This document shows, piece after piece, positions 7,435 to 47,779 of a DNA stretch of 64,000 nt. Source of the stretch: Oikopleura dioica. Lineage: Eukaryota > Animalia > Chordata. Below the pieces are notes generated by a model that saw only the letters and a program-made list of their open reading frames with translations, was not told the DNA's origin and did not search any database. Made by a program: the position numbers and the translations under genes. The stretch lies in NCBI GenBank assembly GCA_907165135.1, contig OU015570.1, forward strand, positions 2,625,929 to 2,689,928. Direction: 5' to 3'. Numbering within the stretch: the stretch's first letter is position 1; each line of letters opens with the position of its first letter.

Positions 7435-7790
7435 GATGTCCTATATTAACTGATCCGATGTCCTATCAGTATTTTCTACTGATGTCCTATCATTTATATG
7501 GATCGTATGTCCATCCTTGTTAAAATAAGTCAAAGAAAATAAAAGTTCAGATAAAGATGTCCTATATTAACTGATCCGATGTCCTATCAGTATTTTCTAC
7601 TGATGTCCTATCTTTTCTATGGATCGTGTGTCCTATCCTATCTGAAAATTCGTCAAAGGAAATAAAAGTTCGGATAAAGATGTCCTATATTAACTGATCC
7701 GATGTCCTATCAGTATTTTCTACTGATGTCCTATCATTTCCGTGGATCTTATGTCCTATCTTTTCCGAGAAATTTGTCCAAGATAATGAG
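7435..7790. repeat. ~122-bp tandem repeat x3 in the 3' non-coding region of the gypsy element
   Basis: gatgtcctatattaactgatccgatgtcctatcag starts at 7435, 7556 and 7679; the sub-motif gatgtcctat recurs inside each unit. Confidence 0.9.
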
Positions 7791-7940
7791 GGTGGGATGA
7801 TGGCCCCCTTCCCCCAAAGTAAATGTCGAGGTACGATGGCACCTAGTTAAAAGGACTTAGTTGGGATGCGATGGCATCTCTGAAAATTGAATATATTTGT
7901 CGAGAAGAATAAACTAGTACGATGGCACTAGTTTGTTTTG

Positions 7941-14746: not shown

Positions 14747-16042
14747 TCAAAGGGATTTAACGTAGTCAACAACTCGTTTTGGAGGTGAGTCGGAGTGAAG
14801 GTATTTGCAAGGTTGGCCTCTTGGGCATTTCTGTCTCCTGACATAGGAAATGCAATGACCTTCCATTTTGGATTTGTCAAGAATTTGTCTCGGTCGCAAG
14901 TTGCGCTTTTCCGAGTCTCGTTTTTCTTGCTTTCTTTTCATATGTTCTTTCATAAGAGCACAAAGCTCGTCAATTTTATCGTTGCTTTCTGTCTTAACTT
15001 CAGCCATGAATAGTTTTTCTGACTTCGGCAAAGATCGTTCGAGCTCATGAGCTCGATCTGCAATCTTTTCGATTGACAGCATCGATTTTTCACGTAAGAG
15101 GAGCTCTTTCAGTCTTGGGTTCTGGCAATCGATGAATCTTTCAAGAATGATTTCCTCATCGGAAGGAGTGATGGTGGTTTTGTTGTAACCTTTCTTGAAG
15201 TATGCTTTTAAATTTGCCATACAGACTCCGAATGAATCTGCACCTCTTTGATACTTAGTAAACTCATGCTTGTAGAACTCTTTAGTTCGTCCCATTATGC
15301 TTATGAGTTTGCATTTGAATAAGCTCCAGTCATTCAGTTCTTTGTCATCAAGGCTCTCAATGATATTTGCACCTGCATCGCCACTCAGTAAATGAGAAAT
15401 AGCGGTCGTGATGAGCTTCGTTTTTGAGACATTTGAACAGGCTGAAAAAATTTCCATATTGCGCAGCCAAGTCTCAATAGGAACTGATGATTGGTATTTT
15501 GGTGCTTTGATTTTGTAATCAGAGCTTAAAGAGTCCTTTTTGTATTTCGGTTCAGCAAAGCGGACTTTCTTGTCTTCTCTTGGCTTGCTTTCCAGTTTGG
15601 GAGTCTCTTCTTTTGGTTTATTCTCAGTTTCTGTTTTAGGACTTTGTGGAGGTCTAATTGTCTCATCAAGGTTATCATCTTCATTGTCACTTTCACTCGG
15701 GAAAAAATGAGTTGCAAGAAGCTCGTTCATGCTCTTTGCTGAGACAAGTGCATAGATCTCATGCGGTTTTATTTTGAAACGATCCTGCGCAACTTTTTGT
15801 TCGCAGATTTCCGCATAGTCCTTATGATATTTTATATCCCCGATGTCACTTTTCTTGAAACAGTATAGTTTTTCGCTGATTTTCAGAAAATCTTTGTCAA
15901 GTGACAGGATATTTAAGATAAGTGATGCCTTGTCCGTTGTCGGATGCTCAGTTGGGTAAGTACGACCAGGAAGTGAGTCGTAAATACACAAAAGCTCCTT
16001 TTTGGAGAGATCTAATGTCGATTTTGAATAAAAAGTCGACAT
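14747..16042 (-). CDS. gag: Gag-like protein (431 aa) with a C-terminal CCCH zinc finger
   Basis: Located after the PBS and in frame with pol; capsid-like helical region; C-x8-C-x5-C-x3-H at aa 397-416. Confidence 0.88.
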   Translation of the reverse strand: MSTFYSKSTLDLSKKELLCIYDSLPGRTYPTEHPTTDKASLILNILSLDKDFLKISEKLYCFKKSDIGDIKYHKDYAEICEQKVAQDRFKIKPHEIYALVSAKSMNELLATHFFPSESDNEDDNLDETIRPPQSPKTETENKPKEETPKLESKPREDKKVRFAEPKYKKDSLSSDYKIKAPKYQSSVPIETWLRNMEIFSACSNVSKTKLITTAISHLLSGDAGANIIESLDDKELNDWSLFKCKLISIMGRTKEFYKHEFTKYQRGADSFGVCMANLKAYFKKGYNKTTITPSDEEIILERFIDCQNPRLKELLLREKSMLSIEKIADRAHELERSLPKSEKLFMAEVKTESNDKIDELCALMKEHMKRKQEKRDSEKRNLRPRQILDKSKMEGHCISYVRRQKCPRGQPCKYLHSDSPPKRVVDYVKSL

Positions 16043-16490
16043 ATTCTAGGGCCTAGCTAAAAAAGAAAAGTGTTAGTAAACTGCTTATGCTGTTGCTTAT
16101 GCTAACTGCTAATGCGTCAACAAAACCTTCTCCAGGTATTACAGGGGAATGTGAACGTTGTCACAGGGAATCGCCTATACGCTAGGCTGCGTTCGGGTAG
16201 TTTTTCGTCTATACGCCGTAGACAGATCTTTTTATTCCCCGCTAGGTCGAAAAAAACCCTTACGCCGAGAATCGAATCAAAAAAGATTCTTAAAGAGTCC
16301 GATATAGATCAGGGCAGACCTTGACAGAGTCACTCCAGGGTGAGGACAACGCAAGTTTTGTGTTAGCTACCGTGTCCAATCTATTATCGTGGAACCGATA
16401 ACTTCACTCACCGAATAGACTGTACTAAGTACAATGATTCAGTCTCGTGAAGAAAGTCAAATTCCTGCTCTGGTTTTTTATACTTGGGTC

Positions 16491-16985
16491 CAGGGCTGGA
16501 TATTTTGAAATCAACAAAAATCTCAAACCCCGAAAATAACATGAATCATCATCTCATCCATTTCAAAAATGCAATCTCAGAAAATTTTCTGTCTGAGATC
16601 TCAATTTTCGATTTTGCAAAAAAATGATATTTGAAATGCTGAGATCTCAATTATCTCAGAAAACTGCACGAGTTGTATACGCGCGTTGCAATGAAATGAA
16701 ATTTGAAATTCTGAGATCTCAAGCATTTCAGGTCCATCTGAACCAATCACAAGTCTTGCTCTAAGCCCGCGACGTTTGTCCGCGGCCCTTGCGCGGTTTG
16801 CAAAATTTTGAGATTTGAGATCTTGAGATCTCAGCCATCTCAAGAACGGAAAAAATTATCACGAGGGTGTTGCAATAATTTGAGATTTGAAATTTGTTGA
16901 GATGGTGCAAAATTTTGAGATAGAAATGAGATTTCACACTAAAATTGATTTGAAATTTTTGCTGATTTCAAAATATCCAGCCCTG
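16491..16985. mobile_element. hAT MITE (495 bp) in the gypsy 5' leader
   Basis: ~38-bp TIR CAGGGCTGGATATTTTGAAATCA; 8-bp TSD CTTGGGTC at 16483-16490 and 16986-16993. Confidence 0.95.
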
Positions 16986-17188
16986 CTTGGGTCTATGCGT
17001 GTACGACTAAATAGACAATACACTGCGACTACAAGATTCAAGATTCAAAACAGCTCTACTAAAGCGCAGAACTGAGTTCGTAAGTACCCCCGAGAGAGTA
17101 CTTGTTACCACTGATTTCTCAGCAGCCAATAAGGTTTGGAAGAACCGCGCCTTATTATGGGAGCTAAAAGTAGAAAAATATACCGTTT

Positions 17189-17201
17189 GGTTCAGTCACC
17201 A
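17189..17201 (-). other. Primer-binding site, probably tRNA-Trp
   Basis: Minus strand TGGTGACTGAACC, 3 nt after the 5' LTR. TGGTGAC is complementary to the 3' end of eukaryotic tRNA-Trp. Confidence 0.7.
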
Positions 17202-17204
17202 ATT

Positions 17205-18115
17205 TGTAGAGGTTTTGCTACTGCAAGTTCCCGGTTGGTTGCTGGTAAATGCTGGTTGGTTGCTGCTAGTTGCTGGTTGGTTGCTGCTAGTTGCTGGTTG
17301 TTGCTGGTTGTTGTTGCTGGATAAAAAGAGAAGTTTTTGTTGTTTTGTTGGTTCTGGTTAGAATGATTTTATTGTGGCAGAAGTCGCCTTTATATACAGT
17401 GAAAAGGGAAAATAAGAATGTTCGAGAAGCTTCTTAGAACAGTAATAGAATATTCAAGTAGCTTCTTAGACAGTAGAAGAACAATCGTGTATATTCTCCA
17501 AGGTGCTGTAATTGGTGAGTCAATGTGACTCATGCTGGATGGAATGTTCTAGCGGCTTATGCCAGGTGATGTAATGATGACTCATATCCAGGGTTGTCTC
17601 CCGCACGAGAGTCACCCGTAAAGTTGTCTCCCACACATCAAGGTAACCATTTATGACTCAATGCGTTGGAATGCAAGGTTTAGTGCTCACCATAGATGGC
17701 GCTGTTGTGTGGCCACTAGAGGGCAGTAGAGAGCTATACCTGAGTGTCCACTAGGTGGCACTAGAGAGCTGACACCAGGTGGGGCGCGAGAGCCAACACT
17801 AGATGGGGCGCGAGAGCCCTCGCTAGGTGGCGCTGTATTAAGTGAGCACTTACTCCGTAACGCTCTTGAGAGGTCTTGCGGTTGATCAGACCTTATAGAA
17901 GTGATCTGGAGGTGAACCGGAAGTGAACCGGAAGTGACCGGAAGTGAACCGGAAGTAATCGGAACATTACCGGAAGTGACCGGAAGTTATCGGAAGTCAC
18001 CGGAAGTGATCTGTATTGGTTCCCTGAGGTGCTAGGATGATTATGTAATGCGAAAAATAGGCTCCTGAGATTGTAAATAGCGTATTTGGGAGCATACAGT
18101 AGGAAAACCACTACA
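17205..18115 (-). repeat. 5' LTR (911 bp)
   Basis: Same length and sequence as 5883-6793; followed on the minus strand by the PBS. Confidence 0.97.
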
Positions 18116-18629
18116 ACAACTCGTTAATTTTCTTCAATTTCAACGAAAAGATCATTTTGGAACCCTAGAAAACAGAAAAGAAGACAGCGCTGGATACACA
18201 CTTGCCGGTCGATACATTTCAGAATATGTCACAGACCCAGAGTTTGTCAAAGACTCTGAAAAAGTCACTGGCTCCAGAGCTTACCATCTTGTGAAGCTTC
18301 TCAAAGACGAAAACAATCAATGGGATGAACGCAAGCTTCTTTTCAAAAAAAAGACCGACTGTCGATGTTTGTTCCAGGATATTAAAAAAGAAAGAAGAGA
18401 AGAACCCATGTCCAACATGTAAACTCAACGCGTCCCTTCATTAGATACACCACGACCTTCAATAATTTATATTTTGTTCAAGTTTTATTTTCACTGAAAA
18501 AACACTACCTCTTTTATCTTCGCAAATCGAAGAATAACTCGTTATTTAGTAAAATTGACAGTTCAATACATCCCTTTCTGCCAAATTAAGATAAAAATCG
18601 CATCAGTTATTTAAATATTTTGATTTTAA

Positions 18630-32045: not shown

Positions 32046-33500
32046 TTAAAAATAACTGTCAATGCAAATTTTGAATTTTCGGAGCCAATTTTTGTAAAAA
32101 TTTTCTATGGGAGCAAAATAATTTTCTGAGTAATAGTTCTTCGCTGTGATCTAATCTACCCAAAAAGGCTGAAAAATTATGAAAATTTTGACTCTTTTTA
32201 TCTTGTTGAAAATCAATCAATCATTTAACGTGTAAGAAGTCGATATTGAGGTCGAATAACCCGAAATTGACATTGCAGAAGTCATGGTTGAAATCGGTGA
32301 AGCCAGGATTAAACTAAATTTATACCAATGCAAAAATGGAGTCAAGTTCAAGAACCATGGTAGAAGTCTCCAATTGTGGCAGGTCGAAAAAAATTTTTTT
32401 TTTTCTGATTGGCTCATCTGAAAGAGCTTCTCAAACTGTATAAAAAACGTTTTTAGAGTCTGCTCAAATCTTCGAAATTTTCGACATTTGGACTTGATAA
32501 AGGTTGAAATTCCGAAATTTTAACTGCTCATAGAGCAAAATTTTTCCATAACAAAATTTTTTTTTTATTTTTTTTTGGAATCTCTATAGTCGAATCTATG
32601 TGCTTGCGAAAATTGAAGCAAATCGGGCAACATTTGGGCTGTAAAAATTTTTTTTTGAGGATTAGTTTTGCACTAATTTCGCAAATACAAAGCATATACT
32701 TTTATTAAATTACAAACTACAAAAAAGTAATCAAATAGTGCTCTGAGGTCACTTGAGGTCATTTGAGGTCATCTGAGGTCATCTGAGGTCATTTGAGAAC
32801 AATTTTTTTTGCCGTTAAATTACATTTTTTTATTTTTTTTAATTTTGAAAATAATAATTTTGAGCAAAAATATTGCTCATTTGATTTTGAAAATTTTTTG
32901 TTTCAATATCGATCGACGGTGAAGTGTACACATGCGCTCGCGATTCCGGAACTACCTCGCTCATTAATGATTATTTAATGGATGCATCAATCAAAATCAC
33001 AGTATGAAAAAAAAATTTCCAAACTAATTTCTGGCTGGCAGTTCACTTCGAGAAAGTTAATTCTGTGAAACACACAAAATTGAAAGAGAAGAAGAGAAAG
33101 CTAAGAGAAAGATTGTTAATAATTTTCGATACCAGTGACAGGTATACTAAATATATATATTTATTCTTAAAATTATATAAGACGCTTGTTAATTGCAGAA
33201 AAATCAAAAACAGAAGAAATCCTGCCAACGACTGACTCCAAAGAAAGTAGAATTCAAACGAAGACAGAAGGTATGCTTTAAAGACTTCCCCACGGTTTTG
33301 GCCTAGATGGGCCTCGCGCAGAAAAAAATTCTGAAAAAACAGTATGTTCGGTGGTCCTTCTTATACTTATTTATTATTATTATCGTTTGACTTATTTTTT
33401 AAACAGATATATCTATTACAAGTCTAAAATTATAAAAGGGAATTTAGGCCATTATAATTCCCTCATTTTACATTTTTCCGTAAATCGGAATAGCGCGGAC

Positions 33501-34716
33501 CAGAGTTACAAATTTTGTGAGCTAGCTGAGGTGAGCTATATGAGCTAGATGAGCTACAGCTCAGCTCAGCTCAGCTCAGCGATTTCGAGGTGAGGGTCAG
33601 CTCAGCTCAGCTCAGCTTAATTTTTCTGAAGAAAGCAAGCTCAACTCAGCTCAATGGTTCTTCGAGAAAAGTCAGCTCAGCTCAGCTAGCTCAATTTTAA
33701 CCTCGACTTAGCTAGCCCAGCTCAGCTCAGCTTGAAAAATTGTCAGCTCAGCTCAGCAAGCTCAGATTGAAAAATCATCAGCTCAGCTCAGCTCAAGAAC
33801 TAACAGATAAACCCCAGCTTAGCTCAGCTCAATTTTTCGACAAAATCCAGCTCAGCTCAGCTCAGCTCAGTTGTTTTCAAAGGGGTCAGCTCAGCTCAGT
33901 TCAGCTTAAAAAATTGTCAGCTCAGCTCAGCTCAAAAATTTTCAGATAAGCCCAAGCTCAGCTCAGCTCAGATGCTTTACAAGGGGGCCAGCTCAGCTCA
34001 GCTCAGCTCAATGGTTCTTCGAGAAAAGTCAGATCAGCTCAGCTAGCTCAATTTTAACCTCAACTCAGCTAGCTCAGCTCAGCTCAGCTTGAAAAAATTG
34101 TAAGCTCAGCTCAGCTAGCTCAGTTTGAAAAATCATCAGCTCAGCTCAAAAACTAACAGATAAACCTCAGCTCAGCTCAGCTCAAATTTTTCGAAATAAT
34201 CCAGCTCAGCTCAGCTCAGCTCAGTTGTTTTCAAAGGGGTCAGCTCAGCTCAGTTCAGCTTAAAAAAATTGTCAGCTCAGCTCAGCTCAAAAATTTTCAA
34301 ATTAGCCCAAGCTCAGCTCAGCTCAGCTCATTTTTTTCGAAAAAATCCAGCTCAGCTCAGTTGCTTTTCAAGGGGCCAGCTCAGCTCAGCTCAGCTTAAA
34401 AAAATTGTCAGCTCAGCTCAGCTCAAAAATTTTCAAATTAGCCCAAGCTCAGCTCAGCTCAGCTCATTTTTTTCGAAAAATTCAGCTCAGCTCAGTTGCT
34501 TTTCAAGGGGCCAGCTCAGCTCAGTTCAGCTTAAAAAAATTGTCAGCTCAGCTTAGCTCAAAAATTTTCAAATTAGCCCAAGCTCAGCTCAGCTCAGTTC
34601 ATTTTTTCGAAAAATCCAGCTCAGCTCAGTTGCTTTTCAAGGGGCCAGCTCAGCTCAATTTCGACCACAGCTCAGCTAGCTCAGCTCACAAAAATTTTCA
34701 AAAATCTGCAACTCTG
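33501..34716. mobile_element. hAT MITE filled with AGCTC pentamer arrays
   Basis: TIR CAGAGTT(A/G)CA; 8-bp flanks GCGCGGAC and GCTCGGAC (1 mismatch); interior (agctc)n with higher-order repeats. Confidence 0.8.
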
Positions 34717-36348
34717 GCTCGGACCGAGAATTAAGATCACTTACGTTCGTTACACCTTTAATAGGGATGAACCTGAAATTGTCAACAAGGCAATCAAGGC
34801 CATCACGGCCAGCATGGCCATCAAGGCCATCGACCCGACCAAAAACTCGACCTAGTCGGAAATGGTGGGGTTTATATTGGCACCGAACGATCCTACCATG
34901 GATTTTTTTGATTTGATCGGTGGTGGGGTTTGGTCGGTGGGTGGTCGGCTTAAGTCGGTTTCTTTGTGTTTTTCGTTTTGACCGATTTTTTTCATTTCTC
35001 TCTGGCGATAAAAGAAAAAGAGATTGTCGACAAGGCCATCAAGGACATCATGGCCATCGAGGCTATAAAGACCATTTTAGAAATCAGCAAAAGTCCCTAT
35101 AACCTGAATTCAACAACGCCCTCAAGGCCATCAATTCTAGAAAGTTGCGGGTTTCCTTTAAGACAGGCGCGGAGCGCACACCCGCTTTTTCTGCTTTCTG
35201 ATCGTTGATTATTGCTTCAAAAGTATAAAAATTGATCTGCTTAGTTAAAACCATGGATGCTCGAAAACAATACCTTGGAAAAATCCCACGATTCCTTAAT
35301 TCCTTCGAAGTGTCAAATGATGGCTCGGGGACCATGGCGAATCTTACCTTTATGATGTCTCGTGTCGTGCAAAGCCAACTCCCTGAGTTTGCTCCAAAGC
35401 AAATGTACAGGGCATTAGAAGATATATTGGAAAGAACCGAAGCCACTATGACTGTCGAGTCGTTTTTCGTTTTCCATTTTCAGGGCGGGCCTGTCATAAA
35501 TTGCTCTTTTGAATGTGCGGTACCGCTTATCATATGAATTTTCGATTATAATCGGGATCATGGCTGTCGAATTCGCGTCCTATGATCTGTCAAAAAATTT
35601 TAGTGTGCGAATTAATATTTACGCGTCGTTTTTCTATCTTTCGCGTTCGTCTCGTTCAATCATCTTCAGAAAGCTTTAGAAAAAGATAATAGAAGTAAGC
35701 GCTTTAAAAGTCTCCAAAATTTCTCTAAAAATTAATTCTTTTTCTTTTCGAGTGACGACAGTTATCAAATAACCAGCTCTGATCTAGACGATCGAGAAAT
35801 TGCAAAATTTATGGTTAAGAGGCCTCTTGAGCTTGCTGTTATATTTAAGACGATCTCTTCGAAAGAATGGCTCAGATTAAAAGCTGAACGATTGGTTAAA
35901 AGTTTTTCTTCCAAAAACTTGACAAGCCTTCAAATTGGAATCAAATATCTAAAGAAACAATAGATGTTTTGGAAATGACGAGGTGTTTAGACTACAGAAT
36001 ATATCAACTTCATCGTGCATATGATGAGCTACGTCTCCAACAAAGAATAAGACGATCTTACAATCAAGGTGGACGACATCAGGGTTATTACGAATTACTG
36101 TGTGGAAAATTTGTCTCTCTCACATCGTTGTTTCCAAAAAACTTGTGGTAAAATCGAATTATATGATGTGGAGTTCATTTTACCTTTTTAAGTCGTCGTC
36201 GTGGATGAGAAGTTCTGTTATGATGTCAATGTTCTACGATGTTTATCCTTTTCTTTCACTCTTTCCTTATTTTTTACGTGATTGTTACCCTTAAGCAATT
36301 TGTTCGATAAAATCTTGGATAAGGATTAATTGTTAAAGTATTTAGACG

Positions 36349-37863
36349 ATGTCCGAGTTTGGCGTCTCTATGATGCCTGTTGAACCACCACCAGATGATT
36401 TATGCGCACTTGGTCCAGCGCCAAGCGTCATGAATATCGATTCTATTGATGCTGTGTCTAACTATGACTTTGACCCCAATGAAGCTCCTGTTAATCTTCT
36501 TCAAGTACCAAGGTTTTTATTCGTTCAAGATTGATTGAATTAAAGTTAATTTTGCATTTCAGTGTTCTTGATCTCGAGAGACTTGATAATCTAAATGAAC
36601 CGCTTGGCACAGCTCCGTCAATTCTTAATATTGACACCATTTCTGTTTATTCCCACGATGAGGTTCAGGCGAATAACTCTGAACTGACTGATTTAACGGA
36701 GGTTTTTATGGTCGAGTTCCAAGTGTGATGAATCTTGACCAGGGTTTCGAAAAATTGGCAGCCATGCGGCGGCGAGGATTTATTCATACTCCGCGCGCCC
36801 TTCGCTTACGGCCTCCATTCATTTTTCGAATCCACGCTCTGGCGGCAAAGCCAGCCGCTGGCCGCTGGATTCCACTGGAGACCGAATTTCAGCCTCGGAT
36901 AATGTAAAATTCGGACTGGGTCGCGTTAACGCAAGATGAATCACCAAGTGGCCGCTGAACCCTGGCGGCCAGCGGAGGTGGGTCTCTAAGAGGTGGAAAC
37001 CAAAAGAGTATGAGTGGGTTGTGGCTGCCGCCTGGCCTCGTATTTTTCGAGACCCTGATCTTGACCATATAAACACAATGAACGAATGCGTTCCAAGTGT
37101 ACCGTCTTCATCAGATTTCGACATAATGAACGGATGCGTTCCAAGTGTACCATCTTCATCAGATTTCGACATAATGAACGAACGAGCGCCTTCTGTGCCA
37201 GATATAAGTTCTCTTACGATTGATGAGGATTCAGAAATTCAATTATCGACGTCTTCAGTGAATGAATTAGGAGCGGAAGCAGATTGCTCTTCGCACCTGC
37301 AAAGTTATGGTCATGAAAATGTGAGTGAGGATATACAAGATTCCGACTACACTTACAATCATGTCAACGGGACAGAAATTCAAAATTCGATGGACACACC
37401 GGAGAATCAATATCTGCAAGATCACGAAGAAACGATGGAAATGATAAAACAATCGCAAAATGGTCACCTTGAGGCGCTTACGAAAACTGAAAATGTCACA
37501 CGATCACGCTTCCAAAAAATCGCACGCAAACCAAGCACTCATAGACCAAGTCTTCTTGAGTGCAGTCGGACGAAGAATTTTCCATTAACCAGAACAAATT
37601 CTTCAACTCGTTCCCTAAGAAACGCGTTCAAGAAAGAATCAAAAGCAAAAACAACAGGCTTAAGGCAAGCTCTGGCAAGAAGTAGGCTCCGCGAGATCGC
37701 CGCATCGGTCGAAATCACCGATCAACGGTCTGCAGACTCTCTAAGAGAGCTTAGTTTTCTATCAATGACTGATAAACTTGCCACGAAAATAATCAATGAT
37801 GTGACAAAGATAATATCGTCAAAGAAAAAGTCAAAATTAGGTGATATTCTCTCAAAGGTATAA
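36349..37863 (+). pseudogene. Acidic low-complexity multi-exon ORF of the large transposon, interrupted by a MITE
   Basis: Repeated motif PS(V/I)(M/L)N(I/L)D x3 and VPSVPSSSDFDIMNE repeats; excising 36740-37057 restores GRVPSVMNLDHINTM. Confidence 0.6.
36740..37057. mobile_element. hAT MITE (318 bp)
   Basis: TIR CAGGGT(T/C)TCGAAAAAT; 8-bp TSD ATCTTGAC at 36732-36739 and 37058-37065. Confidence 0.93.
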
Positions 37864-38204
37864 TCGTTTTTTAAGAATTTTCTAACATTCTTAAGCTGAA
37901 ATCTTCTCCCGCTTTTACGGCGAAAGAAGCAGAAAAACTTTTTGCAAAGTTTTTAGTTAAAGAGCTTAATACAAAAAGGGTGGTAGGCGGCCTTTTGAAC
38001 AGACCTTCAAAGAATGAAAAATATTTTACCTAAAAATTTTTCTATCTTTACTTGTCTGCCCAAACGACCGCTTACAACCCAATAGATACAATGGACCGAC
38101 GTCTCGTCCATCGATTAAATTGTCCAATTATAAAGGTGATGGGTCCTAGCAGCGCTCAGGCCCGACCGTTCAGAGTATCATTTCAAAATCTCGATAGAGA
38201 TCTC

Positions 38205-38274
38205 GGCGAGTTGATCCAGTGGTAGCACACCCCGGCCGGACGCGGGAAACCGTTGTTCAATCCCAGGACTTGTC
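38205..38274 (+). ncRNA. tRNA-like pseudogene or SINE head (Asp/Gly-like)
   Basis: 7-bp acceptor stem GGCGAGT/ACTTGTC; A-box-like TGATCCAGTGG; CCCG..GCGGG arm resembling tRNA-Asp; B-box GTTCAATCC; TTTTT just downstream; D and anticodon arms imperfect. Confidence 0.5.
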
Positions 38275-38493
38275 TAGCTTTTTAGCTTGAGCGCTGTTAA
38301 AATCCATCAAAGGATACTCTTGTTGTCGTAAATGTGGAAATAATTTTCCAACATCTTCTACTGCCTCAGCATTTCATGATCATGTTAAAATATGCTCTGG
38401 TCGAGTCTGCACAGGAAAGATAATAATTATCAGGATTGTCTAAGTATGCTGTGTTCTTATCAAAAATAAGATTGCAAAAAGCACTTTTCTTCT

Positions 38494-41400
38494 TTGGATT
38501 TATACAATAATCACCTTGGTAACTGTACGGCTTCCGTCACAAGCAAAGACTATGATGTGAAGCTATTGAAGAGAAAAGATGCCTACAAATGCTGTGGAAG
38601 TCGTCCAACAAAACAGAATGGCCGGGTAAAACGACAGCATGAGATCAGACAATGCGTTTTGCCAACCTGCTTTATATGCTGCCAGAGGATCCCATTAGAG
38701 CATATTGAAGACCACGTGAGTAATCACAAAGATGACTTCGGCTCCGGTCTAGTTCAAGCTGTTAGAGAAGAACCTGTCAGGGTGCAAAAATCATCTGAAG
38801 AGCCTTATCTTCTTGAAAATCAAGAGGCACCGCATTCATCAAAAAATTTGCCTACAGTGTTAACGAAAAATGTCGAGGCAAGTGAGCAGATGCTTTTTAT
38901 GCCTCAAGAAGTCGGGATTCTATCAAAATCAACGATAGAGCATTTGGATGCTGACGTTCGTCTCGAAAAAATATCACGCGCCTCTAGAGAAGAGGAAGGA
39001 AGTGTTGAACAGAACCAAGAGCAGGAACTAAACATTCAGCCTCGCTCTATTCTTAAAAAGAATAAAACGACGAATTCTGAGGAAGATGACTCTGATCCTG
39101 ATTGGATAGATGAAAATCCCGCTGAGCGGCTTGAACTTGAAAAAGAAAACTTGATAGGTGCACTTGAAGAAATTGCCAGTACATCTTCCGTTCCAAGTAT
39201 TTTGGAAGCTCTGTCAACTTTGAAAACAACCGAGGAAATTAAAAGTGAAATGCAAAACCTGAGTGAGCAGAATCAAAATACTCTCATCAAAATGCAGCTT
39301 TTACCAAGGTTTGTGAAGAGAAAATTTTATAAAAGAATAGAACAATTTATAAAAGATTATAATTCTAGTGAAATAATGAAAAATATGCTTGACAAATCAA
39401 CTTGGAAAAATGAGAACGTGATTTTAAAAGCGGTATTAAAAGAAAATAATTCGCAAGAAAGAATTCATGTTCTTTCCTCGACATTTGGAATTAAGGACCG
39501 GTCAAAAAGTCCAAAACAATATTGATAGAGTAAATGGAAAAACACCCTATTATAAATATCGGAAAGTTGAGCGACCTCGCTTTAGAAAAAGAAACTGAAG
39601 AAGCTTGCAGATGAAAAAGAATCTGGGGAAAATTATGCCAATTTCAATCAGATCAAATCCGCGAATATTTCATTAGATTGGATTATAAAATTAATGAATT
39701 TTACGATCTCCATCATGTCTATAATCCTATATTTGTTTCGGCAATAGACGCATTTCTTGACGAGAGAGCTTTCATTGATCCGAGTCAAAAGAAAGCAACT
39801 CTAAGGGAATCCTTAATTCTTGACCGCACTGTCTTGAAATATCTTCGTGAAAAATGTGATACGCGAACCCATAAAATTGACTTGCTACGACCAACGACTC
39901 AGTCTCTGACCACTTCGAGAAGAATACTGAAAAAAACTCTTGAAGAACTTCACGCTGAATTTATTAGTGAATATCCACAGCTTACACACCTAACTTTGAA
40001 GGAGTTCAAAAGTATGACTCCATTTTACTACATTCCGCCCTCACGTACAACGCAAGTTGTATGCGCCTGCGAGATAGGGTCTTAAATCGTGAATTATTAT
40101 AAATTTATTGTCACTGTAATGGAAATCACACCATGATATGATTAAGACCATTTATTAGTCCTGCCTTAACAAGGGAACTTATGAGAAGGCTGCGCAGAGC
40201 CTTGGAAAGAAATTAGGACAGGAGACTCTTTTCTTAGATATCACAGTTCATCGCAGAATCCGTTAACAGGTCCTAACAAGATCTTGAGGATAAAAAAGCC
40301 CCCCTCCATAAGACGTTCCCGCATTGGCAGGCTTCAATTTCAAAGAAATCTTGGAAAGGAGCACCTGTGCAACAACGGACAAACAATATTGTGTCACTGA
40401 TCGTAAAAAGAAGACAAGTTGCTTTGTTCACCCAAAAAAATTCAACATCCTGCAGCGACTGCACTCACAAGAGTTGCGTTGGTCCGGATGAATTTATGGA
40501 AGACTTTGATCGAGAAATATTCGAAAAAGTCGTACAAATGCATCCTGACGAGACCGTTGCCTTTGACAGATTCGAACTCCTCAAAGCTGGAGTTAAAGCT
40601 GAGACAGCTTTTGTTTCTGGTAGCGAAACTCGCGGTAAAATGCCAATACGGCAATTCTTCGATCAGCTTAAAAGTATGACGAGAGAAACACTTGCCCATA
40701 GCATCGACAAGAGCAGAAATAAAGAAGATCTTAAAGTATATGAACATGGAGATGTTAAGCCAGGGAGTCTTCATCTTGAGCCGAGGGTCTTAAATTGTAT
40801 CGAATGAATACGTCAAGTGTGTCTATAAGCAAGAACTTTCTGAGACCCGTGGAAAGCTTGACTACGCCTCGACGTTTGTTCTTCAAAATAATACTGCGTC
40901 ACAGTTCGGGATCAGAAAATTCATTAATTTCGCTTGGCTTGTTTACATGAACCCTAAAAATAGCATGAATATCTTCAAGCCGGGCGCCTTGGATTGAATT
41001 GTAACGTTTTAACGGCGGTCGCTCGATGGAATGAAAACGAAATACAAAAAATGCAATACTTTCATTTTCTTATGGAGAAGAAATTTGCCGGAGCGCCGAT
41101 TGAGGCGGAAAAAATGATTGTTGAAAATTTTAAAAATCGAAACATAAATTTCACAGTCATTAACAGGATTTCTGAAAGGGTTCGAAAGGGTTAAAATTTG
41201 CATTTTAATGTTGACGATAATTCCATTATGGCTCGTCGGTAGGTAATGGTCTATTTCGATCTTGCGGATTTATAAGATCTTTGAATTTCCCGAACCCTGT
41301 TTTACATAATGCGAGCTCTGAATTCAAATCGAGGGAACATTTTCACCATGCCATTTCAAATAACGATGGCCTGCGGAGAACTTATATTTTCAAAACCAGC

Positions 41401-41991
41401 CGCCATGGAAAAGGTATTTTTTCCGCGAAACTAATTCTAGAATTCTGAGGCCTCGTCGATGGCGCCCATAGTCACTGCGCTACCACGATAAAAAATGCGA
41501 AACTTGTAAATCGCTGTGGTACTCTTGATGAATGCCTCGGATTCTTGAAGGAAAATGAGCAGAAGCTGCGGACAGAAGAAAAAGAAAAACGCGCAAAACA
41601 AAATTTTGCTGGGCGAGAATATGCCATTCTCAAGAATAAAAATGAAGAGACCACGAAATCTTCCGTAAATCTCAACATACCGTCAATTAAATCGATTCGT
41701 ATGATAAACTTCGACGCAGCAAGAGGAGCTCTTTATGCAAAAGACATAGTCTGCAGCTGCGATCTCTGTTCCAGTGGAAAAATTAGTCTCTGTGTTCGAA
41801 ATTCTGGAAACACATTTTCCAGAAAAATCGGACAGAAAGACGGAACAATAATTATTGATAATAAAAATCAGCCTCAAAGAAGACCCGTCAATCTTCGAGA
41901 ATTATCAAACAAACAAACAATCAGCGATTACGTCTACTCTGCAACAGATATTCAAGCTCAGTTAAGGGTTTTAACGACCGAACGTCATTAA
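38494..41991 (+). pseudogene. Intron-containing DDE/D-type transposase (tentatively Sola2-like), with lesions
   Basis: FKSMTPFYY..TTQVVCAC (39678 ORF); EYVKCVYKQELS near 40810; NASSEFKSR at 41307; RHGKG|LVDGAHS across a 36-bp GT-AG intron at 41414-41449; N-terminal Cys/His finger. Confidence 0.68.
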
Positions 41992-42205
41992 CTAAAACAG
42001 GGCTATATGCTCTAGAGAACCCTGATTAAGATTGCGCTCTTAAGATTAGAAAATACAAATAAAACAGTCAGTATCCTCTACCCTGTGGCCCGCCAAAGGT
42101 GTGACTCTAGAGCTTTAAAACCTAATTTTCTGTTTTTCTTAAGCGAAATATCAAAATCTTCTCTGAAAGCGGAAATTTCCAAAGTCCGGGGTCAAAATCG
42201 TTATC

Positions 42206-42667
42206 TTGTCCGAATTTAAAATTCGAGAAACAGATTTTTGCTCATATCCTACATCTTCCGTCGGAAACATGACTCAAGGCACTTATAATGACCCAAGCCT
42301 TAAGAAACGAAAAAAAATTTGTGCACCATTATTGCTGTCATCAAAAGATGAAAACCACGCGGCACTCTTGATCGTTAATGTCAAATCTCGCTCAGTTACT
42401 GTCTATGATACAAATGGGGCTATTGGAAATTATCAAAACGCCATTGATAGTTCGAAAAAAAAACTTCTTGATACTATTGGAAAAATTCTGAATGATCAGG
42501 GCCCTTGGAAGAAAAAACGCGAAAATGTTCCGCAAACGAATCGTGATTGCGCGGTCTATGTGCTCAACAGGTTAAAAAAAATCTTTAAAATTATTTGTTG
42601 CTTAAAATTATTTATAAAAATTATTAAAGAATTGAGCAAGAATTCAAAGCTGGAACACCAGAAATAA
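42206..42667 (+). CDS. Ulp1/SENP-like (C48) cysteine protease domain exon
   Basis: NHAALLIVNVKSRSVTVYDTNG ... PQTNRDCAVYV gives the His-Asp-(Gln)-Cys order and spacing of Ulp1 peptidases. Confidence 0.75.
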   Translation: MSEFKIRETDFCSYPTSSVGNMTQGTYNDPSLKKRKKICAPLLLSSKDENHAALLIVNVKSRSVTVYDTNGAIGNYQNAIDSSKKKLLDTIGKILNDQGPWKKKRENVPQTNRDCAVYVLNRLKKIFKIICCLKLFIKIIKELSKNSKLEHQK

Positions 42668-43235
42668 CATCGTCGAATATTCTTGAGATCAAGGAAAATC
42701 AACTCAAAAAAATTAAGTATGGCAATATTAATAAATACAGTTCATAAATTTAAGTCATTGGGTGTGCAATAAAACAACTCCATCAAAAAGAGTCGCACAG
42801 CATTCAAGTGAAGTCAATGCTGAATCGAAAAGAGTCCGTTTTTCCTGATCTGGAAATATCACGATTACATTTTTTTTCCTCGTTGTTAAATACAAATATT
42901 CCTAATTGTTAATTCTTGTTTTTGAAATTCTCTTTTCTGTGAGTAAAAGAAAGGCAAAAGAAAGAAGAAATCAAATCATTGAATTCAGAATGCTTATAAT
43001 TTTTTTTATTGCCCGTGTGACTATAAAATAAAACAGCCATTCTTCAATCAAATCCTGAAACACAGAAGATATTTAATATTTATCATCGATTCAAACTGTC
43101 TGTATGTTCTCATAACGGAACATGGGTGATGCCTCGACACAGGTCAGAAAAATGAGCGCAATATCTATGTTAGAAAAATGGAAAACTAGTTAATTGAAAA
43201 ATTGTTTTCTCCATCTTAAGCGTAAAATATAAGAT

Positions 43236-43608
43236 CGGCTGCCCGTTTAGCGCCCCGTCGTTATCTATTTTTCAGAGACCCGTCTAATCTGAACGATGAA
43301 TTATATTCTTCGATTTTGTAGAGCTCCGACTTCTTCACTTTTAGTCTTCTATTTCACTTCTACTTTCCTTTTATTTCTAGTCTGAGTTTCAAAATAAATC
43401 TTTAGATTTTTATAGAGGGCTTTGAAAGAGTCGCTCTCATTCCGAGACTTTGACCAAGTTATCCCATTTTGATATTTTCAAATTGTTTGTATAAAAGAAT
43501 AGGCTTTGATGATCATAAAGCAAAAATAATAAAGATAAAATCATTTACCGTTCAGATTTGACGGGTCTCTGAAAAAACGGTCATGGCGGGGCGCTAAACG
43601 GGCAGCCG
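43236..43608. mobile_element. MITE with ~60-bp TIRs
   Basis: cggctgcccgtttagcgcccc..ttttcagagacccgtc..aatctgaacg and its reverse complement at 43549-43608; TSD unresolved. Confidence 0.7.
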
Positions 43609-44244
43609 CGCTCAGCCGATGTTCTATCCATAATATCCATGTTCTATCCTTAATATCATACATTAGTTATGGAGTCTTTATGGTTCAAAGGGCATGAACG
43701 AGAGTGCTGGCGCCGACCATGTTTCTTCGGATACGAAAAAACAAATTTCCTTCTCGGAGATTCACAGGACTGTTTGAATATAAAAAGATGATAGAACAGT
43801 TAGGTCTACGCGGAAAAAATACTTTAATGGGGGCGTCCTTATGGAGAGATAATTTTGAACACATTTTCTTAAAGCTCTTGATATGCCTGTTCAGAATCGC
43901 GAATAAACATCATATCGGGGGTATTGGGAATTCGAGAAAAATTCGATTTTATGGTTTGTGGGCCTCTTTTCGGCGGCCATCATATCTATATCCCGATGCC
44001 CCCGATACAATTTTTAATCGCGATTCTGAATGAGCATCTTGAGATCTTTAAGTAGACGCGTAAAAATTTTCAAAATATGAGGGTGCGACCTGCTTTTGGT
44101 TTTCCGCGGAGTCCCCTTATATATGTGTTTCATTAGCTAAAGTAAGAAATTATTCAAACACCACTTTAGATAAAATATTTCGGAAAACACAAATTAAAGA
44201 AAAAAAACTGGATTATTACGTCATATTCTGGTGCCTGTTTAACT

Positions 44245-44918
44245 GAATTAGCAGTCCTGATGAAAGTAGGACAAATCTGCGATGAGGAAAGAAGACCAAT
44301 TCTTCAAATCAAGAGCCGGAATGCCTGGAACTATGGTGAAAATCTACCGGAGAGATTTTTATGCGAAAATTGCCATACAAATTGTCATTCGCGCGTCTCC
44401 GGAACAGTTCTAGTCTATGCTGGACACAACAATATTCTGAAGGCATCAACACTGGCATTCCAAGATGTTGACCTAGATAAAGCAATTCAGGATAGTTCTT
44501 TCTCTATCTAAATCGTCGCAAGAACATTTTTTTTATCTATGTCCGATTATAAAGATAATTAACAAAATAAAAATAAAAGAACTTTTCAAAGGTTTTACAT
44601 AGAACCCTTACATCGCTGTTTACGAATGCAAGAAAAATCCTCTTTGTTCAACCTTTTCCACTTGCTAAGCCGCTTAGAACAATTGAAGAATCAACACAAA
44701 AATGGCTCAAGAAGATATTAAGTGCAAAAGTACCTAGCTTAGCTAACTATTATCGAGTAAAACAGGAAGAGGTTTTCATTTAATTGGAAATAGAACTAAA
44801 AAATTGAATGTTTTTGAGTACCGATTCTTCAGAAGCCTCAAACAGCATTTTTTTTCGCCAGATAAAGTTCATCTGAAAGACAATTATGCTCGTCAATTAA
44901 TCGTCTCAATTATTCAGG
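44245..44918 (+). CDS. SGNH/GDSL-hydrolase-like multi-exon gene
   Basis: VLVYAGHNNIL (block III-like), ARKILFVQPFP, FFSPDKVHLKDNYARQL (DxxH block V); a possible block I (IFIIDSN) lies near 43075. Confidence 0.55.
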
Positions 44919-47779
44919 TAAAATTGAGGATACTCATAGAAGCTTAGATTTAAGGACCCTGCCCCCGGCATCATTCTTTTCGAAAAATGGATATTAAGCA
45001 AACAAGTCCTTAAATAAAGAATATTTTACAGTAACTTCAAATATCTTACTATCTGAAATCTTTGCCTTTTAAATTATTTTTAATAGAGCGTCGAAAAACA
45101 AATTTTAACAGCGAATGACAGTTATCCAGAACCACGGAGTCTTCCTAAACGAAAGAAAGGTATTTATAAACATGAAAAATATGGTCGAAATCCTCAGTGT
45201 TAAAGTTTCAGATCGTCAAACAATCTTCTTTGACTGCTCTAAACTCTCTCTTATGCCGTCGAGAAAAAAAAGTAATTGCTTGTATCTTTATTTTTTAAAT
45301 TTTAAAAATATTAAGGAAATTTTCATCGCAGAATGCCTGGATTTTCTGACTGAGAAGATTTTTAAAAGAAGAACAAAACGAGAAGGAACAAACACAACAT
45401 GCCTCATTCTTTTTAGTTTAAAGTGCTTTTTTATTTGCATCTTACACATATGCACGGTATAAAAATTATTTTTTGTTTTTAAAATTGATAAAATAATCGT
45501 TTTCATGTTTCAAATAAATAAAAATATGTAATTTACCGGCAAAAAAAAGTTGACCTCAAATGACCTCAGATGACCTCAAATGACCTCAAGTGACTTTAGA
45601 GCATTATTTGATTAATTTTTTGTAGTTTGTAATTAAATAAAAGTATATGCTTTATATTTGCAAAATTAATGCAAAACTAATCCTCAAAAAAAAATTTTTG
45701 CAGCCCAAATGTTGCCCGATCTGCTTCAATTTTCGCGAGCACATAGATTCGACTATAGAGTTTCCGAAAAAAAATAGAAAAAAAAATTTGTTATGGAAAA
45801 ATTTTGCTCTACGAGCAGTTAAAATTTCGGAATTTCCACCTCTGACAAGTCCAAATCTCGAAAATTTCAAAGATTTGGGCAGACTGTAAAAACGTTTTTT
45901 ATACAGTTTGAGAAGCTCTTTCAGATGAGCCATTCAGAAAAAAAAATTTTTTTTTCACCCTGCCACAATTGGAGACTTCTACCCATGTCCTAGTTAGTAT
46001 CGGATAGGGTCGGGTAACATTGCCAATACATTGGTAGAGTGGGATCGAATCCTGCCTGGACACTGTTATTTTTATTTTCTATTGGTGGAACCGCGGGCTC
46101 GCTCGCAGTGAAAACTCGAAACGCGTCGCGGCAAAAGCTTCTCGCCCCGGAGCGTCACCATCAGAGTACGACTGCGCGCTTGAAAGTGGTTCGTTCCTGA
46201 AATTTTAATTCTTCCGAAGGTCATTATCTCGGAAACGGAAGGGATTGGAAAAAAATTAAGAACACAATTACAATACCCCTTTTTTCATTCATAACTCTCA
46301 GAACTAAATTTTGGTCCGATTTGCGTTCGGTCCCTAGGGCAAGCTCGATTTAAGAATGAGGCTGCAAAAGTCATACAATAGAATAAAGCACTACATCTCT
46401 CCACTCCGATCTTTAGAATTTTCATATCGTGCCTACGAGCTGAATTATTAACACTCGAGAATTCCATTTGAACCATTCGAAGAATCCCGATATGGTTCGG
46501 GCATATCTCGAATGGTTCGGGAAAATTCCGCCGCCGTGCAAAAAGAAATTTGAAAATGACTCAAGTGTAGAATAAAAAACGCGCGCGTAAAGTAGCACCA
46601 CCGAACCGGGCGGCAAAGGGCGGCGCAAGGCTGTGCTATTCAATAGCCCCCATTTCAAGTGTACATAAGTAATACTCGGATTGGCACTATGAAAACAAGT
46701 CCACTAAAAAGGTCAAGGTCTCTACGACATACAGTTTTTGATGGAATTTTTGGACATCAACTTTTGGACATTTTTCTAATTTGAACTAGTTTCCTCGGGA
46801 CTTTTTTTAAGTGATTCTATGAAATTTATGGACAATTTTGTTCACCAAAATTCTCTTTTTTTTCTGTCAGTTAGTTTTAGTTTCTGATCAAAAATATAAA
46901 TTTTCTATAAAAAGATAAAATTAAAGGTTGATTCCGTGCCCTAGAAATTTTATTTGTCTTTCGAAGGAAGATTAAAAGGTTACGATCGAGTTCTTCCTCA
47001 AAAAAAATTTTTATAGGCGATTTTGGTGGGACATTTCTAGGGAGCGTGTATCAATTTTTTGGAGAAAACCTAGCAACGAAAAATGATTTCTTTTTTTGAA
47101 AAGACCACGGGCTTATCAATGAACTAGGGCTGAAACTGTCAATCCGAATATTTAAGGTACTTATGTATACTTGAATTCTAGCTTATGTTTTTCGATCAAA
47201 ACTTAGAAAGAAAATAAAAACTTTGGTTCGTATGCCAAATTTTATCTAATTTGAATAAGAAATTCAGGCCTCCTACAAAAGTGACAAAATAGCGCGTGGC
47301 GCTCACTCGGCCTTGTCCCTTAAATCGAGTAAGTCATTGATATCGGTTTATTAAAAAAAATATCAATAAAGAAAATGCGATCATTATTCTCTGAAATTAA
47401 AACAAAATAGTTCAATTTAAAAATAACTTGATCAAATACAGTGAGTTTTTCCTCTTTGTAAAAATGAGTTTTCGCGGGGCACGTTTTTTCATGTAAATAA
47501 GCATATACTGTATATATAATATACAAAGTTGATAAATGAAGTAAAGGAGTTTATTTGCAGATCGATTTCGGTCAAAGGACCATCTTCAGTGCAGAGAACT
47601 AAACTATCTGAAAAAGTAACCCAAACATAACTACCTACCGTCTCGGAGTTGAGGACGAACTAGTATTCGTTGAGCAAAAAATAACTGATGCTCTCCAGTG
47701 TTCTAGAGATAAACAATAATTTGGAATTTTTAGTGATTTTCAGAGGCACCAAAATGGTTTCGGTACTTTAATTTAATTA

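What the first reader, a model, noticed from the sequence alone, without database searches (positions are those of the whole stretch)
32360..45982. 13.6-kb multi-gene DNA transposon with ~480-bp TIRs, GTAG termini and a 5-bp TSD
Seen: long inverted ends, exact CCATG duplication, and a spliced transposase with NASSEFK and HGKGLVDGA motifs, plus several extra spliced genes. Recalled, not verified: this motif style resembles Sola2-type transposases, which I remember as having 4-bp TSDs and GRG termini. Inference: the terminus/TSD signature and cargo load fit no superfamily description I know, so this may be an undescribed lineage.
Basis: partly seen in the sequence, partly recalled or inferred. 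Interest (0 to 1): 0.82.

Follow-up and report, generated by a model that had tools for sequence, protein, structure and literature searches.

The report
Young Sola2-like transposon in Oikopleura
This is a real, very recently mobile 13.6-kb cut-and-paste transposon of the tunicate Oikopleura dioica. Its enzyme resembles the rare Sola2 transposases and is joined to a SUMO-protease-like domain, but the claimed 5-base target duplication does not hold in a second copy (3 bases fits best), and the extra "cargo genes" have no support.

Summary
The mobile element is confirmed. It spans window 32359-45983 (13,625 bp) and has ~500-bp imperfect terminal inverted repeats (TIRs). The window is the Y-specific region of O. 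dioica OKI2018_I69. A second full-length copy sits on chr2, differs by only 19 small events in 12.9 kb, and has unrelated flanks, so the whole unit moved very recently.

The GTAG / 5-bp target-site duplication (TSD) reading fails. The chr2 flanks read CTTTG and CTTTC. A 3-bp TSD (CAT here, TTT on chr2) with symmetric GGTAG...CTACC tips is perfect in both copies. A 4-bp TSD with a one-base asymmetric tip cannot be excluded.

Only one gene is recognisable, on the + strand at 38.3-42.7 kb. It encodes zinc-finger-like motifs, a transposase core and a Ulp1/C48 protease domain with its catalytic residues present. The core is co-linear with three signature blocks of published dictyostelid Sola2 transposases.

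All other ORFs in the ~8 kb of extra DNA lack any family or homologue. That DNA is largely satellite repeats and a nested small inverted-repeat element.

Two oddities concern the transposase. The codon of the second catalytic Asp is interrupted by 131 nt in both copies. The window copy also has a 1-nt homopolymer frameshift that the chr2 copy lacks.

This scan had already noted Sola2-like elements with 3-bp duplications on other pieces of this genome. Verdict: a new variant of a known kind, of moderate interest.

The parts
32356..32358 (.). Left target-site duplication CAT (3-bp reading)
   Evidence: The second copy has TTT at the same positions.
32359..32861 (+). Left terminal inverted repeat, tip GGTAGAAGTCTCC
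   Evidence: 433 nt, 93%; 503 nt, 90%. Homology with the chr2 copy starts here.
32744..32797 (+). Subterminal array of about five 10-bp direct repeats (TGAGGTCAYY), mirrored in the right TIR at about 45545-45598. Probable transposase-binding sites (inference).
   Evidence: period 10, 5.4 copies, 93%.
33552..34702 (.). Satellite-like tandem repeats: (AGCTC)n-rich units of about 35, 71 and 135 bp
35229..38030 (+). Orphan + strand ORFs (35229-35534, 36346-36725, 36940-37860, 37875-38030). They are acidic, Ser-rich and internally repetitive. They could be an untranslated or N-terminal extension, or non-coding filler.
   Evidence: No Pfam match. The 307-aa ORF has no homologue. Only ab initio models P0003 and P0004 stitch them together.
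38291..39522 (+). N-terminal region with about four C2H2/C2HC-like zinc-finger motifs and an acidic linker
   Evidence: Translations; weak Pfam Zn-C2H2_12 match (E=0.038); 91-92% identical to parts of P0003 and P0004.
39717..40073 (+). Transposase exon A (ends ...PFYYIPPSRTTQVVCACE)
   Evidence: tblastn against L001 ORF1: 45% identity, E=3e-33.
40312..40786 (+). Transposase exon C. The window copy has A7 at 40434-40440, which shifts the frame. The chr2 copy has A6 and reads through.
40857..40907 (+). Sola2 block 1 (LDYASTFVLQNNTASQF, first catalytic Asp). It is reached in frame by a GT-AG intron starting at 40787 (31 or 70 nt).
   Evidence: compared with DFa-2 and PPa-1 'DFKEN...SQNFYG'.
40964..41175 (+). 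Transposase exon E (strands beta2-beta4; ends ...FTVINRIS + GA)
   Evidence: tblastn against P0001 residues 13-70: 41% identity, E=1e-7.
41176..41306 (+). 131-nt interruption inside the codon of the second catalytic Asp (GA|...|T). It has 8-bp inverted repeats (AGGGTTCG / CGAACCCT) near its ends and no GT-AG boundaries that would remove it exactly.
   Evidence: Sequence; overlapping alignments. Identical in both copies.
41307..41413 (+). Sola2 blocks 2-3 (NASSEFKS ... FKTSRHGKG)
41414..41449 (+). 36-nt GT-AG intron splitting HGKG|LVDGA
   Evidence: P0001 is continuous across this point.
41450..41949 (+). Transposase C-terminal exon G (LVDGAH..., CxCxxC motif)
   Evidence: 36% identity to P0001: E=8e-27 and E=2e-42.
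42167..42664 (+). Ulp1/SENP (peptidase C48) domain with the His, Asp, Gln and Cys catalytic positions present
   Evidence: Pfam PF02902, E=1.2e-7, above its cut-off. Aligns to SENP1 2iyc. In the relative P0001 it is fused in one ORF with the transposase.
43236..43608 (.). Nested small inverted-repeat (MITE-like) element
   Evidence: pair I2, 72-nt arms, 85%.
45490..45983 (-). Right terminal inverted repeat, tip ...GGAGACTTCTACC
45984..45986 (.). Right target-site duplication CAT

Best explanation
This is a class II cut-and-paste DNA transposon of Oikopleura dioica from a divergent Sola2-like lineage.

Shown: a 13,625-bp unit bounded by ~500-bp imperfect TIRs (tips GGTAG...CTACC) exists in two almost identical copies at unrelated loci (Y-specific region and chr2). 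Each copy is flanked by a perfect 3-bp direct repeat.

Shown: its one recognisable gene encodes zinc-finger-like motifs, a transposase core and a Ulp1/C48 protease domain. The core carries the Sola2 blocks D[FY]..., [D]N/G-A-x-x-FKS and HGK[GS]xxD in the right order and spacing.

Inferred: the transposase binds the subterminal 10-bp repeat arrays, excises the element at the GG/CC tips, and inserts it with a 3-bp staggered cut.

Inferred: the remaining ~8 kb is accumulated non-coding filler rather than captured genes. It consists of satellite repeats, a nested MITE-like element and orphan ORFs.

Open: whether this copy makes its own active enzyme. In both copies the second catalytic Asp codon is interrupted by 131 nt. 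The window copy also has a 1-nt homopolymer frameshift that the chr2 copy lacks.
For: TIRs. The terminal 24-mer is unique to the two ends.

Second copy: L004 4590-18219 differs by 19 events in 12.9 kb, mostly homopolymer indels. Homology starts and stops exactly at the TIR tips, and the flanks differ. The window equals OU015570.1, the Y-specific region (L005, 100% identity including flanks).

TSDs: CAT/CAT and TTT/TTT. Two perfect 3-mers by chance is about 2e-4.

Enzyme: its only relative among 1.84 billion representative proteins is P0001. P0001 lies on metagenome contigs L001 and L002, which have the same exon order and a transposase-Ulp1 fusion.

Sola2 comparison: published sequences Sola2_DFa-2 and Sola2_PPa-1 (PMC3627910, supplementary file 3) show 'LMDFKENI..SQNFYG', 'FW[SC]D[GN]A[KR]HFKS' and 'YHGKSxxDxHF'. 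This element and its relative show 'LDYASTF..TASQFG', '[H/D]N..S/REFKS' and 'RHGKGLVDGAH'. The spacing from the block-2 residue to HGK is 32 residues here and 36-45 in the Sola2 sequences.

Ulp1: PF02902, with catalytic positions aligned to SENP1.

Cargo: no family or homologue for any cargo ORF; no tRNA or Rfam RNA.
Against: Homology to Sola2 rests on motif-level comparison by eye. Pfam has no Sola model (PMC5751038), and the reference sequences exist only as text in a paper, so no E-value against a Sola2 profile was obtained.

Two copies cannot separate a 3-bp TSD from a 4-bp TSD, because the ambiguous base is C in both.

The residue at the second catalytic position reads His (or Glu, with a 26-27-residue insertion) under canonical splicing. 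The encoded enzyme may therefore be inactive.

Confidence: 0.75

Rival explanations
1. It is a canonical Sola2 element with a 4-bp TSD. The element would be GGTAG...CTAC, and the C after CTAC would be the first base of the TSDs CCAT and CTTT, so the tips are offset by one base.
For: CCAT/CCAT and CTTT/CTTT are both perfect. Published Sola2 families have 4-bp TSDs (PMC3627910).
Against: It requires asymmetric tips, although the inverted repeat is perfect through GG/CC. It also requires both TSDs to start with C by chance (about 1 in 16). Other follow-ups of this scan report 3-bp TSDs for Sola2-like elements of this genome, one with an empty site (leads only, not tested here).
Confidence: 0.15
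2. One reading: GTAG...CTAC tips with a 5-bp TSD mark an undescribed superfamily carrying several cargo genes.
For: Exact CCATG on both sides of this copy. A metagenome contig (L003) has the 22-nt tip preceded by A rather than G.
Against: The chr2 copy gives CTTTG against CTTTC, although the two copies differ by only 19 events in 12.9 kb. The L003 match is at chance level: a bacterial MAG gives an equal 20-mer hit, and L003 shares nothing beyond 22 nt. The enzyme carries the Sola2 blocks. The cargo ORFs are unsupported.
Confidence: 0.03
3. It is a non-autonomous, oversized derivative. Its own transposase gene is dead (the catalytic Asp codon is interrupted in both copies, and this copy has a frameshift), and it is moved in trans by a shorter autonomous relative.
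For: The 131-nt interruption at GA|T is shared by both copies and has no exact canonical intron. The window copy has A7 where the chr2 copy has A6. The scan has noted 4.0-4.5-kb elements with zinc fingers, transposase and Ulp1 elsewhere in this genome.
Against: Apart from that site, every exon stays open and co-linear with the relative at 36-45% identity. The Ulp1 catalytic residues are present. A canonical 53-nt GT-AG intron (41190-41242) keeps the frame. The exon-G search found no annotated protein of this family in O. dioica that could act as a helper. The frameshift may be a nanopore homopolymer error.
Confidence: 0.35
4. It is a Mutator-like (MULE) element, as suggested by the long TIRs plus Ulp1 and by MULE-Ulp1 elements noted elsewhere in this genome.
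For: TIRs of hundreds of bp and Ulp1 domains are typical of some MULEs (background knowledge). The scan notes list MULE-Ulp1 elements in O. dioica.
Against: No MULE or Transposase_mut Pfam match on any exon. The TSD is 3 bp, not 8-11. The core carries the Sola2 blocks.
Confidence: 0.02

Closest known systems
Sola2 group of the Sola superfamily (Bao et al. 2009; dictyostelid Sola2 elements DFa-2 and PPa-1 in PMC3627910)
   Same: Three co-linear transposase blocks around the presumed catalytic residues (D-F/Y-x-x-x, D-N/G-A-x-x-FKS, HGK-S/G-x-x-D) with similar spacing. Cut-and-paste element with TIRs and a short TSD. Large elements (10-15 kb) that carry extra DNA are also known in dictyostelid Sola2 (file 1).
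   Different: TSD most likely 3 bp, not 4. TIRs about 500 bp, against 12-22 bp. Tips GGTAG, not GAG. The transposase is fused to a Ulp1/C48 protease and preceded by zinc-finger motifs. Sequence is very remote: the exon-G search reached no annotated Sola2 protein.
Sola2-like elements noted by this scan elsewhere in the O. dioica genome (s1-365277, s1-330352, s1-378127, s1-406171)
   Same: Same host. Spliced Sola2-like transposase. A 3-bp duplication is reported. Some have the zinc-finger + transposase + Ulp1 architecture.
   Different: Those are 3.4-4.5 kb; this one is 13.6 kb, with about 8 kb of extra DNA and ~500-bp TIRs.
Ulp1-bearing MULEs (for example the plant KI-MULE/Kaonashi type; background knowledge)
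   Same: Long TIRs. A C48 protease encoded with or beside the transposase.
   Different: Different transposase superfamily and a different TSD length (8-11 bp).

Membership tests
Sola2 | Transposase core with the Sola2 signature blocks, in order | tested here: met
   Blocks 1-3 were compared by eye with published Sola2_DFa-2 and Sola2_PPa-1, using this element and its relative L001/P0001. Order and spacing match.
Sola2 | Statistically significant match to a Sola2 transposase profile | not testable with these tools
   Pfam has no Sola model. The reference sequences are held only as text in a paper supplement, and I did not type them in.
Sola2 | Intact catalytic triad | tested here: inconclusive
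   The first Asp (LDYAS) and the HGKGLVD block are present. The second Asp codon is split by 131 nt (41176-41306) and reads His or Glu under canonical splicing. P0001 has Asp at this position.
Sola2 | 4-bp target-site duplication | tested here: inconclusive
   Two copies: 3 bp is perfect with symmetric tips; 4 bp is perfect only with a one-base asymmetric tip.
Transib (the classic 5-bp TSD superfamily) | 5-bp TSD and a RAG1-like core | tested here: not met
   The 5-bp reading mismatches in the chr2 copy. No RAG1 Pfam match.
MULE/Mutator | MULE transposase domain and an 8-11-bp TSD | tested here: not met
   No PF10551 or PF00872 match. The TSD is 3 bp.
PIF/Harbinger and CACTA (3-bp TSD superfamilies) | DDE_Tnp_4 or CACTA transposase; TWA target or CACTA tips | tested here: not met
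   No such Pfam match. The TSDs are CAT and TTT. The tips are GGTAG.
Ulp1/SENP peptidase C48 | C48 domain with His-Asp-(Gln)-Cys | tested here: met
   PF02902 scores 32.2 bits, above its 20.7 cut-off. H, D, Q and C align with SENP1 2iyc.

The most novel reading that the evidence does not exclude
An Oikopleura-specific offshoot of Sola2 that has changed its integration geometry (3-bp stagger) and acquired ~500-bp TIRs and a Ulp1 protease fusion. It would still be transposing today, including into the coding exon of a thioredoxin-family gene. Its catalytic Asp codon would be restored only by removing a 131-nt non-GT-AG segment with inverted-repeat ends, that is, a transposon-derived non-canonical intron inside a transposase gene.
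Probability: 0.15. Interest if true: 0.7.

Novelty: new variant of a known kind. Interest (0 to 1): 0.5.

Why it matters
Sola2 is one of the least studied cut-and-paste superfamilies. It has no solved structure, no Pfam model and no demonstrated active element. A family whose two copies differ by only 19 events in 12.9 kb, in a laboratory-cultured chordate, would be a candidate for the first experimentally tractable Sola2-type transposon. One of those copies appears to lie inside a coding exon. A 3-bp TSD would show that TSD length is not fixed within the group. The Ulp1 fusion adds to evidence that SUMO proteases are recurrently recruited by unrelated transposons. For annotation, gene models g5249 and g17185 of OKI2018_I69 are chimeric artefacts of this element.

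Tried and rejected
- Protein Atlas feature search on two exons: nothing usable.
- Exhaustive phmmer search with exon G: one true relative (P0001) and one spurious hit (P0002, an Ig-repeat protein).
- Word search with P0001: it found only itself.
- Word search with the 307-aa ORF: it found only this element's own gene model.
No read evidence on splicing, expression or empty sites was obtained.
- Terminal 20-mer scans. The metagenome hit L003 is a GC-51% eukaryotic contig with PARP, kinase and ETF genes, and it shares only 22 nt. The GTDB hit L006 is a Pirellulaceae MAG. Both are at the expected chance level of about 1. The viral collection gave no hit.
- Look-up of the spurious 93-aa ORF inside the TIR, to fish out other copies: not on record.
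- AlphaFold of the relative's single-exon core (L001:1056-2219): pLDDT 35.7, unusable for fold search. Only the strand/helix order is suggestive of an RNase H-like core.
- MAFFT alignment of the exon fragments to P0001 (A2) was misaligned and not used.
- The Bao 2009 and Yuan & Wessler 2011 papers are not held. The Sola2 alignment PDF is held only as garbled text.
- Steps left out: joining the exons into one protein and searching or folding it; typing the published Sola2 sequences into an alignment tool.
Full report
**Observation.** The repeat finder reports inverted arms at 32359-32791 and 45551-45983 (433 nt, 93%). Gapped BLAST extends them to 32359-32861 and 45490-45983 (503 nt, 90%). The outermost 24 nt are identical at both ends and occur nowhere else in the window, against 0 expected. 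Each TIR carries a subterminal array of about five 10-bp repeats, TGAGGTCAYY. CCATG does flank both ends. However, the inverted repeat includes one more base on each side (GGTAG...CTACC). The same letters can therefore be read as a 3-bp CAT duplication plus the element's own G/C plus one matching flank base on each side.

**Origin and second copy.** A word search with the 351-aa ORF at 38470-39522 returned two Oikopleura dioica OKI2018_I69 gene models, P0003 on chr2 and P0004 on the Y-specific region. Their loci were fetched.

- L005 (OU015570.1, Y-specific region) is 100% identical to the window including both flanks, so the window is that locus.
- L004 (OU015567.1, chr2) holds a second full-length copy at 4590-18219.
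- Homology with the window starts and ends at the TIR tips, and the flanks are unrelated.
- Over 12.9 kb the two copies differ by 19 events, mostly single-base homopolymer indels.

The 13.6-kb unit therefore transposed as a whole and very recently. The 7-10% mismatch between the two TIRs of one copy is a property of the family, not a sign of age.

**Target-site duplication.** The chr2 flanks are ...AAAACCGCTTT|GGTAGAAG and CTTCTACC|TTTCGCGATG.

- The 5-bp/GTAG reading gives CTTTG against CTTTC, a mismatch. That is implausible in so young an insertion.
- A 3-bp TSD (CAT; TTT) with symmetric GG...CC tips is perfect in both copies.
- A 4-bp TSD (CCAT; CTTT) is also perfect, but only if the right tip is one base shorter than the left.
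- Because the ambiguous base is C in both copies, neither these two copies nor empty sites can separate 3 bp from 4 bp.

I favour 3 bp at about 85:15, for two reasons. The tips are symmetric under that reading. Independent follow-ups of this scan also report 3-bp duplications for Sola2-like elements of this genome. Those reports are leads, not evidence tested here.

Exact 20-mer scans for the tip in large collections gave one metagenome hit (L003) and one bacterial MAG hit (L006). Both share nothing beyond about 20-22 nt and are at the expected chance rate.

**The gene.** All convincing coding signal is on the + strand between 38.3 and 42.7 kb. Pfam recognises only a Ulp1/C48 domain at 42167-42664 (PF02902, E=1.2e-7). 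Its His, Asp, Gln and Cys positions align with SENP1.

An exhaustive phmmer search of 1.84 billion representatives with exon G (41449-41988) found a single true relative, P0001 (36% identity, E=8e-27). It comes from two ENA metagenome contigs, L001 and L002. tblastn of the three L001 ORFs onto the window gives co-linear matches:

| Window segment | Identity | E-value |
|---|---|---|
| 39717-40073 | 45% | 3e-33 |
| 40360-40780 | 36-42% | 2e-24 |
| 41009-41176 | 41% | 1e-7 |
| 41299-41949 | 36% | 2e-42 |

In P0001 the transposase C-terminus and the Ulp1 domain form one ORF, so the fusion is ancestral to both relatives. Upstream, 38291-39522 carries about four C2H2/C2HC-like motifs. Pfam support for them is weak.

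Inferred splice sites:

- A 36-nt GT-AG intron at 41414-41449 splits HGKG|LVDGA.
- A GT-AG intron from 40787 to 40817 or 40856 joins ...LHLEPR to (L)DYAST... in frame. L001 has a canonical GTAAGT...TTTTAG intron at the same place.
- Several other junctions need short introns, some with G*-AG boundaries. From background knowledge (Denoeud et al. 2010), O. dioica is known to use such non-canonical boundaries.

No RNA evidence was obtainable.

**Classification.** Pfam has no Sola models (PMC5751038). Authentic Sola2 transposases are printed in supplementary file 3 of PMC3627910. Their conserved blocks have clear counterparts here:

| Block | Sola2_DFa-2 / Sola2_PPa-1 | Relative (L001 / P0001) | This element |
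|---|---|---|---|
| 1 | LMDFKENIALGMGPEELSQNFYG / LCDFKENISLG...SHEFYQ | EMDYASTISITQNVTSQAEF | KLDYASTFVLQNNTASQFG |
| 2 | FFWSDGAKHFKS / TFWCDNARHFKS | CRITDNCAREFKS | ...NASSEFKS |
| 3 | AQYHGKSDVDRHF / APYHGKSECDQHF | TSKHGKGRVDGAH | TSRHGKGLVDGAH |

The spacing from the block-2 residue to HGK is 32 residues here and in P0001, against 36 and 45 in the two Sola2 sequences. This is motif-level evidence, not a statistical test.

Other superfamilies were checked and fail. MULE, Transib, PIF/Harbinger and CACTA fail on both the Pfam domain and the TSD or tips. Published Sola2 elements have 4-bp TSDs and 12-22-bp TIRs.

**Integrity.** In exon C the window copy has A7 at 40434-40440, which breaks the frame. 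The chr2 copy has A6 and reads through, aligning end to end with L001 ORF2. This may be a real mutation or a nanopore homopolymer error.

The more intriguing feature is shared by both copies. The codon of the second catalytic Asp is split as ...ATT TCT GA | 131 nt (41176-41306) | T AAT GCG.... Without those 131 nt the reading would be RISDNASSEFKS, exactly co-linear with P0001's RITDNCAREFKS. With them, BLAST aligns both ...VINRISE and ...PVLHNAS to the same P0001 residues.

The 131-nt segment has 8-bp inverted repeats near its ends: AGGGTTCG at 41177-41184 and CGAACCCT at 41291-41298. It lacks GT-AG or G*-AG boundaries that would remove it exactly. A canonical 53-nt intron (41190-41242) keeps the frame, but it leaves a 26-27-residue insertion with Glu or His at the catalytic position.

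The low-confidence model of the relative's core (pLDDT 35.7) is unusable for fold search. It only shows the strand/helix order expected of an RNase H-like core, with that Asp at the end of the fourth strand. The element is therefore either an enzyme gene with an unrecognised non-canonical intron or a defective copy moved in trans. I cannot decide between these.

**Cargo.** The remaining ~8 kb contains:

- A 1.1-kb (AGCTC)n-rich satellite at 33552-34702.
- A nested 373-bp inverted-repeat element at 43236-43608.
- Orphan ORFs.

Thirty-odd stop-free segments on both strands gave no Pfam family at or near threshold. That includes the region another note calls SGNH-like. The 307-aa ORF has no homologue. 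No tRNA or Rfam RNA is present. The annotated models P0003 and P0004 are ab initio chimeras. They stitch element ORFs to flanking DNA and skip the transposase core. The "multi-gene cargo" is therefore unsupported.

**Context of the chr2 copy.** On the minus strand the reconstructed empty site reads through as MAKTKRERAKKIEKDPIGELKIIA|KAVFVGIFGVFLVFLRAVFPFDVSG.... This lies directly upstream of thioredoxin-domain exons (VEFYAPWCGHCK). The insertion most likely lies in the first coding exon of a PDI/TMX-like gene. That fits a very recent, probably still polymorphic, insertion.

**Verdict.** This is a real, young, large Sola2-like transposon with a Ulp1 fusion, long TIRs and most likely a 3-bp TSD. 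It is a new variant of a known kind, and related elements were already noted by this scan elsewhere in the genome. The 5-bp/GTAG signature and the cargo-gene claim are not supported.

Noticed in passing
L004 4362-4604 and 18157-18414 (chr2 copy flanks): The chr2 copy appears to be inserted in the first coding exon of a thioredoxin/PDI-like gene on the minus strand. A 146-codon open frame (MAKTKRER...IIA|KAVFVGIFG...) reads through the reconstructed empty site, upstream of the VEFYAPWCGHCK exons. The annotated 233-aa model instead borrows sequence from inside the element.
   Followed up: partly
window 41176-41306: A 131-nt segment with 8-bp inverted repeats near its ends splits the GAT codon of the transposase's second catalytic Asp. 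It is present in both copies and has no canonical splice boundaries that remove it exactly. It could be a mini-insertion or a non-canonical intron.
   Followed up: partly
window 32744-32797 and about 45545-45598: The subterminal 10-bp repeats read as AGGTCA half-sites spaced by 4 nt. This is the layout of a nuclear-receptor DR4 response element. It may be coincidental with their likely role as transposase-binding sites.
   Followed up: no
window 40434-40440 against L004: Most differences between the two copies are single-base homopolymer indels, which suggests residual nanopore errors in the OKI2018_I69 assembly. One of them (A7 against A6) decides whether exon C of the transposase is in frame.
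   Followed up: partly
window 43236-43608 and 43851-44069: Two small inverted-repeat structures lie inside the element (72-nt arms at 85%; 79-nt arms at 75%). They are probably nested MITE-like insertions and are present in both copies.
   Followed up: no
L001 / L002 (ENA metagenome contigs ERZ23499026, ERZ27264819): The only detectable relative of this transposase comes from two metagenome assemblies. These contigs show eukaryote-type GT-AG introns, so they are presumably DNA of another, unidentified eukaryote. The contigs are too short to show element ends.
   Followed up: partly
window 5883-6793 and 17205-18115: A pair of 911-bp direct repeats, 100% identical, lies 11.3 kb apart upstream of the element. 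This fits the LTR retrotransposon noted by other readers of this window.
   Followed up: no
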